From positions 62,001 through 126,000 of IMG/VR virus record IMGVR_UViG_3300029911_000001: a stretch of DNA of 64,000 nt; one strand, given 5' to 3'. Below the pieces are notes generated by a model. That model was given only the letters and a program-made list of their open reading frames with translations. It was not told where the DNA came from and did no database searches. Every line of letters starts with the position of its first letter. Positions within the stretch are counted from its first letter, which is position 1. Shown piece by piece: positions 9,386-9,760 of this stretch. A program made the position numbers and the translations under genes.

Positions 9386-9760
9386 GGGGTGAGCCAGTGA
9401 CTCACCCCATCCTCAGATACCTATTGATTTACAAGGGAGGTACCCAACCTCGCCTTACGCTGGGTTAAGCAGCGATGGGGAGTGCAACATTGCTGTTGGC
9501 AGTTATATTGAACACTTTCCCCGTATAACGAACAGGTTTGTGCGAAAGTAAACGAGTTGTAGACCGCATCTCCAGCGTATCCCGTCGAAGCCGTGACATC
9601 CCCACAATTCAGCACACTATTCAGTGACCATCCCTCGTTCTAGCCCGAGATTACAAATGGCCCTTACTCCTATGTGCTGAATGGTGGAGATGGTGGGAGT
9701 CGAACCCACGTCCGAAACATCCTTTGACCGCCTTCATCCCCTTGCGGGGAAAACAACCAT
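9386..9760 (-). ncRNA. ssrA: Circularly permuted (two-piece) tmRNA; tag (A)ANSNVALPIAA
   Basis: The 3' acceptor piece ...GGACGTGGGTTCGACTCCCACCATCTCC-A-CCA ends at 9682, upstream of the 5' piece GGGGATGTCACGGCTTCGAC starting at 9603. G3.U70 pair present. Tag frame 9500-9465 follows ATAACT. Outer ends are approximate. Confidence 0.9.

What the first reader, a model, noticed from the sequence alone, without database searches (positions are those of the whole stretch)
9386..9760. Phage-encoded circularly permuted two-piece tmRNA
Seen: the CCA-bearing acceptor piece (ends 9682) precedes the GGGGAUG-starting coding piece (starts 9603). The 78-nt intervening segment is closed by TTCAGCACA/TGTGCTGAA. 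G3.U70 and A73 alanine identity elements are present. The tag ANSNVALPIAA* ends in a ClpXP-type AA. Established: permuted tmRNAs are known from Alphaproteobacteria and some Cyanobacteria and Betaproteobacteria, and phage tmRNAs I know of are mostly one-piece. Inference: possibly an independent permutation, with a very compact coding piece.
Basis: partly seen in the sequence, partly recalled or inferred. Interest (0 to 1): 0.7.

Follow-up and report, generated by a model that had tools for sequence, protein, structure and literature searches.

The report
Permuted two-piece tmRNA in soil jumbo phage
A giant soil phage related to an Acidobacteria phage carries a real ribosome-rescue RNA gene (tmRNA) whose two halves are in swapped order; phages with such genes were already known, but this family is inherited within one phage group, fits none of the three bacterial lineages, and its likely hosts use the ordinary one-piece form.

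Summary
On the minus strand, an acceptor piece (about 9760-9682, ending CCA) precedes a 78-nt hairpin spacer. The coding piece follows (9603 to about 9376, tag ANSNVALPIAA*). ARAGORN calls a permuted tmRNA, and Rfam tmRNA_permuted scores 85.1 bits against a cut-off of 47.

The window lies in a 231-kb IMG/VR phage record related to the cultured Tunturiibacter (Acidobacteriota) jumbo phage Tunturi 5. Tunturi 5 and seven other distinct relatives carry the same permuted gene. It always lies 2-9 kb downstream of the same virion gene. Across them, 13 of 19 stem pairs show compensatory changes and G3.U70 never varies. It is therefore a functional, vertically inherited gene, not an assembly artefact.

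None of the phages checked encodes SmpB, so the RNA must use host factors. The family scores below the cut-offs of the alpha, beta and cyano lineage models. It scores lower on them than true beta tmRNAs score on the alpha and cyano models. Two relatives carry a standard one-piece tmRNA at another locus.

Phage two-piece tmRNAs are already published, and the coding piece is not unusually compact. Whether this was an independent permutation remains unresolved.

The parts
9764..9781 (-). Conserved upstream motif ACTTC-N7-TATTAG, promoter-like, ending 3 nt before the proposed start of the acceptor piece
   Evidence: The same ACTTY-N3-9-TATNAK motif lies upstream of all 8 orthologues. The window has 6 matches against 1.8 expected. 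The standard sigma-70 scan does not find it. Function is inferred.
9682..9760 (-). Acceptor piece, about 79 nt. It holds the 3' strand of helix 2, the T arm, the 3' acceptor strand and an encoded ACCA. The 5' end is inferred, not mapped.
   Evidence: ARAGORN 3' tRNA domain, RF04321 alignment, conserved AUGGUYGU start in 5 orthologues.
9753..9758 (-). GGUUGU, the acceptor-piece strand of distal helix 2
   Evidence: It pairs with ACAACU at coding-piece nt 44. Relatives have GGUCGU with ACGACC or GCGAUC at nt 44-46, a compensatory change.
9738..9749 (-). CCCC-GCAA-GGGG hairpin with a GNRA tetraloop in the acceptor piece
   Evidence: Read from the sequence. Equivalent C-GYAA-G hairpins occur in L098, L100 and L101, and it is formed in the cofold.
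9713..9719 (-). UGUUUCG, the acceptor-piece strand of the helix next to the tRNA-like domain
   Evidence: Helix 1: 7 pairs, 6 with changes on both sides, 84% of cells paired.
9693..9709 (-). T arm: GUGGG, loop UUCGACU, CCCAC
   Evidence: Six stem variants across the family, all fully paired.
9682..9692 (-). 3' acceptor strand CAUCUCC plus discriminator A73 and CCA
   Evidence: U70 is invariant in 8 of 8.
9604..9681 (-). 78-nt intervening segment, excised during maturation. It is a stable hairpin leaving a 4-nt UUGU leader before G1.
   Evidence: -28.3 kcal/mol, z = -4.1. Spacer length varies from 11 to 79 nt in the family, so the sequence is dispensable. The metatranscriptome run gave no coverage here.
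9376..9603 (-). Coding piece, about 218-228 nt. The 3' end is inferred from the terminal hairpin and U run.
   Evidence: ARAGORN. The next ORF's ATG is at 9364 with an AAGGAG ribosome-binding site upstream.
9597..9603 (-). 5' acceptor strand GGGGAUG (G1-G7, with G3 opposite U70)
9578..9584 (-). CGGGAUA, partner of 9713-9719
   Evidence: helix 1.
9555..9560 (-). ACAACU, partner of 9753-9758
9502..9549 (-). Candidate pseudoknot 1: ACUUUC/GAAAGU (9549-9544 with 9519-9514) crossed by GUUAUA/UAUAAC (9529-9524 with 9507-9502)
   Evidence: Read by eye. RF00023 aligns CUUUCG/GAAAG to the PK1 stem. Not supported by covariation, so inferred only.
9465..9500 (-). Tag reading frame, GCC resume codon to UAA, encoding ANSNVALPIAA*
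   Evidence: ARAGORN. Family members all keep a frame ending in small hydrophobic residues.
9458..9474 (-). Hairpin CGCUG / CAGCG with the UAA stop codon in its loop
   Evidence: Read. It matches the usual tmRNA helix 5 layout (established knowledge).
9386..9408 (-). Terminal GC-rich hairpin followed by UACCGAAUUU (to 9376)
   Evidence: The nearest relative L098 has the same layout with a different stem sequence.

Best explanation
This is a functional, phage-encoded, circularly permuted (two-piece) tmRNA gene. It belongs to a family inherited vertically in a clade of soil jumbo myophages related to Tunturiibacter phage Tunturi 5. The shown parts are the gene anatomy, its conservation, the covariation and the synteny. 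The following mechanism is inferred. One precursor is transcribed from a conserved phage promoter-like motif. Host RNase P cuts 5' of G1 (9603), and the spacer left on the acceptor piece is trimmed back to the encoded CCA (9682). The two RNAs stay joined by the 7-bp acceptor stem and helix 2. Host alanyl-tRNA synthetase charges the RNA through G3.U70 and A73. Host SmpB, which the phage lacks, delivers it to stalled ribosomes. Translation then resumes at GCC and adds ANSNVALPIAA, marking the peptide for host proteases. The likely benefit is sustained ribosome rescue during a long, translation-heavy infection by a phage that also carries 32 tRNAs.
For: Detection: ARAGORN calls a permuted tmRNA, and RF04321 scores 85.1 bits against a cut-off of 47.

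Phage context: the record is a 231-kb virus with 32 tRNAs. Its structural proteins are 41-49% identical to Tunturi 5 and collinear with it.

Family: RF04321 hits 9 of 14 related IMG/VR records, including all 3 complete ones, and also hits Tunturi 5 at 86.4 bits.

Covariation: 94.1% of stem cells pair and 13 of 19 pairs have compensatory changes. No shuffle of 500 does as well, and G3.U70 is invariant in 8 of 8. A distal helix covaries between GGUUGU/ACAACU and GGUCGU/ACGACC at a fixed position.

Synteny: the gene always lies 2-9 kb downstream of the gp222-like virion gene on the same strand.

Tag frames are kept in every member.

No SmpB was found in the window's record, in three complete relatives or in Tunturi 5.

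A soil metatranscriptome holds a 152-nt contig, 95% identical, covering 9594-9465. That is the coding piece from just after G1 to the stop codon. There was no coverage of the spacer or the flanking ORFs.
Against: There is no direct evidence for two mature RNAs, for charging or for tagging. The RNA-library contig comes from a 95% relative, DNA carry-over cannot be excluded, and contigs do not show ends. The host of the window's own phage is inferred only from kinship to Tunturi 5. The promoter motif is not a standard sigma-70 match. Pseudoknot 1 is not supported by covariation. Some relatives have odd tags that end in AHA or start at a GUC resume codon. The acceptor piece also contains a second GGGGAUG at 9741-9735 that could close a minihelix on its own.
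Confidence: 0.8

Rival explanations
1. Origin rival A. The gene was captured from a bacterium of a known permuted lineage, most plausibly the beta (Rhodocyclales-type) lineage. It then diverged quickly in the phage, so it is not an independent permutation.
For: Among the lineage models, beta scores highest for most members, at 34-51 bits. A pattern built from phage-family features (UCCACCA, short spacer, URU before GGG, GGCUUCGAYGG) hit only Rhodocyclaceae-type beta tmRNAs among 185,579 species genomes. Beta and phage genes share the AUGGUCGU start, followed by a hairpin and then GUUUCGGAC. The tmRNA database lists 5 Acidobacteriota instances as 'permuted (beta)'.
Against: Phage members score 15-51 bits on the beta model, against 230-244 bits for true beta genes and a cut-off of 84. 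Most of the phage hits cover only the tRNA-like domain. Coding-piece identity to beta genes is 27-55%, no higher than to one-piece phage tmRNAs. The tags differ: ANDERFALAA in beta against ANSNVALPIAA, ANAPKAMAAHA and others in the phages. The known hosts are Acidobacteriota, not Betaproteobacteria. The pattern scan was biased by its own design.
Confidence: 0.35
2. Origin rival B. The permutation was independent and arose within phages or their Acidobacteriota hosts from a one-piece tmRNA, for example by tandem duplication followed by loss of the outer halves. That would make this a fourth permuted lineage.
For: The family falls below the cut-offs of all three lineage models (window: alpha 30.1 of 50, beta 44.9 of 84, cyano 40.0 of 70). 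The family's scores are lower than the cross-scores of true beta genes on the alpha model (56-64) and the cyano model (63-72). Acidobacteriota have 1589 standard tmRNAs and only 5 permuted ones in 2144 genomes. One-piece tmRNAs exist in the same phage group: G013 at 93.4 bits and G018 at 124.4 bits. G018 shares the acceptor stem GGGGGCG with G005, and G013 and G001 share tags that begin AEP.
Against: No intermediate was found, such as a tandem copy or a one-piece gene at the syntenic site. The one-piece genes sit at another locus beside tRNA arrays. G018 is nested inside the permuted-bearing clade, so its gene looks like a later replacement, not an ancestor. Sequence identity gives no signal either way. 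The shared stems and tag starts may be chance.
Confidence: 0.3
3. Function rival. The RNA acts mainly as a decoy that soaks up host SmpB or alanyl-tRNA synthetase and blocks host trans-translation, like the tRNA-like-domain-only tmRNA of mycobacteriophage DS6A. On this reading it does not rescue ribosomes.
For: No phage SmpB was found. The window's acceptor piece could fold alone into a 60-nt alanine minihelix, which gives the RF00023 hit at 9682-9741 of 52.3 bits. The DS6A precedent is cited in PMC4131195.
Against: All 8 family members keep an open tag frame with a proper resume context, a stop codon and an alanine-rich end. Helix 2 between the two pieces covaries. The internal GGGGAUG is not conserved in the nearest relative.
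Confidence: 0.08
4. Artefact or relic: a mis-assembly, a decaying pseudogene, or an attachment-site fragment of a host ssrA gene.
For: Temperate phages often carry ssrA fragments (PMC9004378). The window's record is a metagenome assembly.
Against: Identical sequence occurs in other assemblies. The same order is present in an isolate genome. Both halves are present with compensatory changes, and the position is conserved in the structural-gene region. No standard tmRNA half lies downstream.
Confidence: 0.02

Closest known systems
Two-piece (circularly permuted) tmRNA of Alphaproteobacteria, a beta-proteobacterial lineage and a cyanobacterial lineage (Keiler, Shapiro & Williams 2000; Sharkady & Williams 2004; Rfam RF04321, RF01849-51)
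   Same: The acceptor piece with encoded CCA lies upstream of the coding piece. An excised spacer separates them. The acceptor stem forms in trans and carries G3.U70 and A73. Helix 2 holds the pieces together. The tag frame follows an Ala resume codon, and the region after the tag is built of hairpins. It scores 85.1 bits on the general permuted model.
   Different: It falls below the cut-off of each lineage-specific model. It sits in a phage whose likely host phylum uses one-piece tmRNA. Spacer length ranges from 11 to 79 nt within the family.
Two-piece ssrA of marine phages such as OM43 phage Melnitz and Pelagibacter myophages (Buchholz et al. 2022, PMC9004378)
   Same: It is a complete permuted tmRNA gene in a large lytic myophage that also carries tRNAs and encodes no SmpB of its own.
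   Different: Melnitz ssrA groups with alphaproteobacterial SAR11 genes and is preceded by a glutamine riboswitch. Here no Rfam riboswitch was found, the sequence does not meet the alpha model (30.1 bits) and the setting is soil Acidobacteriota phages.
One-piece tmRNAs of huge and jumbo phages (mycobacteriophage Bxz1 group, Bacillus phage G; Al-Shayeb et al. 2020, PMC7162821)
   Same: It is a translation-support gene carried with large tRNA sets in very large phage genomes. Relatives G013 and G018 of this very clade have such one-piece genes.
   Different: The gene order is permuted and the mature RNA would be in two pieces.
Beta-lineage permuted tmRNA of Rhodocyclaceae, Sterolibacteriaceae and Methyloversatilis (loci L114-L121)
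   Same: It shares the AUGGUCGU start of the acceptor piece, a hairpin before GUUUCGGAC, a short spacer ending UAU before G1 and CAC(U)GGCUUCGACGG after the acceptor strand.
   Different: The tag is ANDERF/YALAA. These genes score 230-244 bits on RF01850, against 15-51 bits for the phage family. The coding piece is shorter, about 190 nt.

Membership tests
Two-piece (permuted) tmRNA, Rfam RF04321 | The 3' half of the tRNA-like domain, with CCA, lies upstream of the 5' half in the gene | tested here: met
   CCA ends at 9682 and G1 is at 9603 on the minus strand. ARAGORN flags the gene as permuted.
Two-piece (permuted) tmRNA, Rfam RF04321 | Score at or above the curated cut-off of the covariance model | tested here: met
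   85.1 bits against 47, with all model positions 1-213 matched.
Two-piece (permuted) tmRNA, Rfam RF04321 | A 7-bp acceptor stem formed between the two pieces, with G3.U70, A73 and CCA (alanine identity) | tested here: met
   Seven stem variants are all compensated, and G.U and ACCA are invariant in 8 of 8.
Two-piece (permuted) tmRNA, Rfam RF04321 | T arm, and helix 2 linking acceptor and coding pieces | tested here: met
   T arm cells are 100% paired, with 4 of 5 pairs changed on both sides. The proximal helix is 84% paired with 6 of 7 pairs covarying. The distal helix covaries.
Two-piece (permuted) tmRNA, Rfam RF04321 | Tag reading frame with a resume codon, a hydrophobic Ala-rich end and a stop codon | tested here: met
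   The frame GCC...UAA encodes ANSNVALPIAA*. All relatives keep a frame.
Two-piece (permuted) tmRNA, Rfam RF04321 | The precursor is processed into two stable RNAs | tested here: inconclusive
   A metatranscriptome contig covers only the coding piece of a 95% relative, with nothing on the spacer. Contigs do not show ends, and DNA carry-over is possible.
Two-piece (permuted) tmRNA, Rfam RF04321 | Works with SmpB, is charged with alanine and tags stalled peptides | not testable with these tools
   No SmpB gene was found in the phage or its complete relatives. Host SmpB is assumed.
alpha_tmRNA (RF01849) | Score at or above 50 bits on the lineage model | tested here: not met
   The window scores 30.1 bits and the family 20-35 bits.
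beta_tmRNA (RF01850) | Score at or above 84 bits on the lineage model | tested here: not met
   The window scores 44.9 bits, covering the tRNA-like domain only. The family scores 15-51 bits and true beta genes 230-244 bits.
cyano_tmRNA (RF01851) | Score at or above 70 bits on the lineage model | tested here: not met
   The window scores 40.0 bits and the family 18-46 bits.
Standard one-piece tmRNA (RF00023) | Contiguous order: 5' tRNA-like half, tag, pseudoknots, 3' tRNA-like half | tested here: not met
   The 52.3-bit hit at 9682-9741 skips 318 model positions and rests on a chance GGGGAUG at 9741-9735. The coding piece aligns only to model positions 1-291, at 22.3 bits.

The most novel reading that the evidence does not exclude
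The Tunturi 5-like jumbo phages carry a fourth lineage of circularly permuted tmRNA that arose independently of the three bacterial lineages. It has been inherited vertically within a phage clade whose Acidobacteriota hosts use one-piece tmRNA. It is interchangeable with one-piece phage tmRNA genes, having been replaced by one in the G018 line. This would give a natural, culturable system (Tunturi 5 with Tunturiibacter psychrotolerans) for asking why tmRNA genes repeatedly become permuted and what a phage gains from its own tmRNA.
Probability: 0.3. Interest if true: 0.6.

Novelty: new member of a known kind. Interest (0 to 1): 0.45.

Why it matters
Permuted tmRNA is a textbook example of RNA gene rearrangement, so far tied to three bacterial lineages and to mitochondria. 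Here a conserved, covarying permuted tmRNA is shown in a clade of soil jumbo phages that includes a cultured isolate. In that isolate the gene was overlooked: it is not mentioned in the paper and ARAGORN misses it. The mismatch with the host phylum's one-piece form raises a question. So do the failure to fit any lineage model and the swap between permuted and one-piece genes inside one phage clade. Together they make origin and function testable: does the phage need its own ribosome-rescue RNA, and does the two-piece form work with a host SmpB adapted to one-piece tmRNA? In practice, annotation pipelines that rely on tRNAscan-SE or ARAGORN alone miss half of this family. Sporadic 'permuted' tmRNAs reported in MAGs of unexpected phyla may be phage contigs.

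Tried and rejected
- **16-mer scan of IMG/VR.** An exact 16-mer across the CCA-spacer junction gave 49 loci, of which 47 were chance matches in coding DNA. Only two identical copies were real.
- **Leader plus D-loop pattern.** It added one chance hit, L075.
- **gp222-like protein scan of 185,579 species genomes.** It found no relative. No Acidobacteriota genome handle could therefore be obtained, and the host ssrA could not be compared directly.
- **Strict family pattern in IMG/VR.** It found only three records that were already known.
- **Pairwise identity of coding-piece 5' regions.** Values were a flat 27-58% between permuted phage, one-piece phage and beta genes. No tRNA-like-domain or tmRNA tree was attempted.
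- **Minimum-free-energy cofolds of the two pieces.** They reproduced only the acceptor stem, the T arm and the GNRA hairpin, and were otherwise inconsistent between relatives.
- **Pseudoknot 1.** It could not be confirmed by covariation by hand.
- **Pfam and PHROG scans of neighbouring ORFs.** They gave almost nothing.
- **Sharkady & Williams 2004.** The paper is not held.
- **TAG recoding as an explanation for the suppressor tRNA.** It found no support.

Full report
**Observation.** On the minus strand the region reads exactly as described.
- The T arm is GUGGG/UUCGACU/CCCAC at 9709-9693.
- The 3' acceptor strand CAUCUCC and ACCA follow, ending at 9682.
- The spacer is 78 nt (9681-9604). Its ends UUCAGCACA and UGUGCUGAA pair. 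It folds at -28.3 kcal/mol, z = -4.1 against shuffles.
- GGGGAUG starts at 9603 and pairs with the upstream strand to give G3.U70 and A73.
- The frame 9500-9465 encodes ANSNVALPIAA*.
- ARAGORN reports a permuted tmRNA at 9374-9774 (-) with this tag.
- Rfam's general permuted model RF04321 scores 85.1 bits over its whole length, against a cut-off of 47.
- A second Rfam hit to the standard model, at 9682-9741 with 52.3 bits, is an artefact. It skips 318 model positions and uses a chance GGGGAUG at 9741-9735.

**Context.** The window is bases 62,001-126,000 of a 231,108-bp IMG/VR virus record, estimated 74% complete. The record has 52% G+C, 32 tRNA genes and this one tmRNA. Most proteins have no family match. 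The 2028-aa fibre-like protein is 41% identical to a protein of Tunturiibacter phage Tunturi 5. Tunturi 5 is a 308,711-bp jumbo myophage isolated on an Acidobacteriota host from Finnish tundra soil (PMC11924767). The baseplate and tail block is collinear with Tunturi 5 at 35-49% identity. The host of the window's phage is therefore probably an acidobacterium. This is an inference from kinship.

**A conserved family.**
- Tunturi 5 itself has a homologous permuted gene at 157,899-158,195 (-), scoring 86.4 bits.
- That gene lies in an unannotated gap and ARAGORN misses it. The Tunturi paper never mentions tmRNA.
- Scanning IMG/VR with a neighbouring virion protein gave 18 related loci. RF04321 hit 9 of 14 of those records, including all three complete genomes of 300-456 kb.
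- Two further assemblies hold copies identical to the window. Together with the isolate genome, this rules out an assembly artefact.
- There are eight distinct sequences.
- Their acceptor stems are GGGGAUG, GGGCCCG, GGGCCUG, GGGCGUG, GGGGGCG, GGGCUCG and GGGGCCG. Each is matched on the other strand, with G3.U70 and ACCA unchanged.
- On the alignment of the tRNA-like domain, 94.1% of cells pair. Shuffles give 75.5% and slid partners give 43-55%. Thirteen of 19 pairs change on both sides.
- A distal helix between the first bases of the acceptor piece and coding-piece nt 44-46 also covaries: GGUUGU/ACAACU against GGUCGU/ACGACC.
- Spacers are 11, 11, 28, 32, 35, 36, 78 and 79 nt, so the spacer is processed filler.
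- Every member keeps a tag frame. Examples are AEPMALAAAA, ANAPKAMAAHA, VTAPKAMAFAAAA and two tags of 30 and 34 residues ending in AMAA or AMAAAA.
- All members share an upstream ACTTY-N3-9-TATNAK motif.
- In all eight phages the gene lies 2-9 kb downstream of the same virion gene on the same strand. This indicates vertical descent.

**Mechanism.** The anatomy, conservation, covariation and synteny are shown. The following steps are inferred from established tmRNA biology.
- A single precursor is transcribed.
- RNase P cuts before G1.
- The trailer is trimmed to the encoded CCA.
- The two RNAs stay paired.
- Host alanyl-tRNA synthetase charges the RNA through G3.U70.
- Trans-translation then adds the tag.

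No SmpB gene exists in the window's record, three complete relatives, Tunturi 5 or G013. The RNA must therefore use host SmpB.

One soil metatranscriptome holds a 152-nt contig, 95% identical, covering 9594-9465. That span is the coding piece from just after G1 to the stop codon. Nothing was found on the spacer or the flanking ORFs. This is consistent with a processed, abundant coding piece but is not proof.

**Comparison with known lineages.** The table gives bit scores on the three lineage-specific models.

| Model | Cut-off | Window | Phage family | True beta genes |
|---|---|---|---|---|
| alpha RF01849 | 50 | 30.1 | 20-35 | 56-64 |
| beta RF01850 | 84 | 44.9 | 15-51 | 230-244 |
| cyano RF01851 | 70 | 40.0 | 18-46 | 63-72 |

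The window meets none of them. The true beta genes were found. By this measure the phage family is at least as far from each lineage as beta genes are from the alpha and cyano models.

Some resemblance to beta genes exists. It includes the AUGGUCGU start, a hairpin and then GUUUCGGAC. It also includes UAU before G1 and GGCUUCGACGG after the acceptor strand. The family-derived pattern hit only Rhodocyclaceae-type genes among species genomes. That scan was biased by its own design.

The 2025 tmRNA database counts 1589 standard, 0 alpha, 5 'beta' and 0 cyano permuted genes in 2144 Acidobacteriota genomes. The host phylum is therefore one-piece. The five exceptions may be phage contigs of this family.

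**Permuted and one-piece genes inside one phage clade.** Two relatives carry a standard tmRNA instead, beside their tRNA arrays and away from the syntenic site. They are G013 (93.4 bits, tag AEPQLALAA) and G018 with G019 (124.4 bits). No record holds both forms.

In a baseplate-protein tree, G013 is the long outgroup. G018 with G017 is sister to the window plus G001, with full SH-aLRT support. That group lies inside a clade whose other members (Tunturi 5, G011, G003, G009, G005) are all permuted. The simplest reading is that the permuted gene is ancestral to the Tunturi 5-like clade and was replaced by a one-piece gene in the G018 line.

Where the permuted gene first came from is unresolved. 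Pairwise identity of the coding-piece 5' regions is a flat 27-58% across all groups.

**Novelty and verdict.** Phage-encoded two-piece tmRNAs are published. Melnitz and the pelagimyophages carry them, and 53 of 133 unique phage tmRNA structures were two-piece, mostly from marine phages (PMC9004378). tmRNAs in huge phages are also known (PMC7162821). The coding piece (about 220 nt) is ordinary, since beta coding pieces are about 190 nt.

Four things are new:
- a soil, Acidobacteriota-associated phage family;
- its poor fit to all three lineage models;
- its vertical inheritance, with one replacement by a one-piece gene;
- its presence, unreported, in a cultured phage that allows direct tests.

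I rate it a new member of a known kind with moderate interest. I give a 0.3 chance that it represents an independent fourth permutation.

Noticed in passing
window 5323-5396 (-): A tRNA with anticodon CUA, called 'Pyl' by ARAGORN, is an amber suppressor and sits in a cluster of six phage tRNAs (420-5396). Stop-to-stop frames of at least 150 aa already cover 83% of the genome under the standard code, so there is no sign of TAG recoding.
   Followed up: partly
window 9735-9741 (-): GGGGAUG inside the acceptor piece repeats the true 5' acceptor strand at 9603-9597. The acceptor piece alone could therefore close a 60-nt alanine minihelix. This produces a spurious above-threshold hit to the standard tmRNA model. 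It is not conserved in the nearest relative.
   Followed up: partly
G018:C1:255448-255801 (L132) and G013:C1:184444-184784 (L104): Two related jumbo phages carry a standard one-piece tmRNA (124.4 and 93.4 bits) beside their tRNA arrays instead of the permuted gene. G013's gene does not encode the full CCA. ARAGORN misses the G018 gene.
   Followed up: partly
L025:3805-4353 (Tunturi 5, PP885688.1 about 157.8-158.4 kb): Tunturi 5's permuted tmRNA has a 34-residue tag followed by three stop codons. About 190 nt of unexplained sequence lies between the conserved promoter-like motif and the tRNA-like domain. The GenBank record lists 350 features for 350 ORFs, so no RNA genes are annotated at all.
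   Followed up: partly
L097, L099, L100, L101 (G005, G006, G011, G009): Some tags are unusual. Two end in AHA rather than AA. Two appear to resume at GUC (Val). The 30-34-residue tags contain VLSFARK or VLPFA, which recalls cyanobacterial tags (from memory, not tested).
   Followed up: no
window 16682-17422 (-) and 50443-51093 (+): Two homing-endonuclease-like ORFs (phrog_314, E = 2e-38 and 9e-12) are inserted among structural genes.
   Followed up: no
window 17654-19339 (-): A 561-aa ORF joins a region 35% identical to part of the Tunturi 5 portal ORF with a C-terminal NUDIX domain (Pfam E = 2e-11).
   Followed up: no
window 14449-15045 (-): A 198-aa ORF has a collagen-like repeat and a CBM_5_12 carbohydrate-binding module. 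It is possibly a fibre or decoration protein.
   Followed up: no
window 9764-9781 and 5 other sites: The motif ACTTY-N3-9-TATNAK occurs 6 times in the window against 1.8 expected, and it lies upstream of every tmRNA orthologue. It may be a phage-specific promoter. Tunturi 5 encodes its own sigma factor, gp211.
   Followed up: partly
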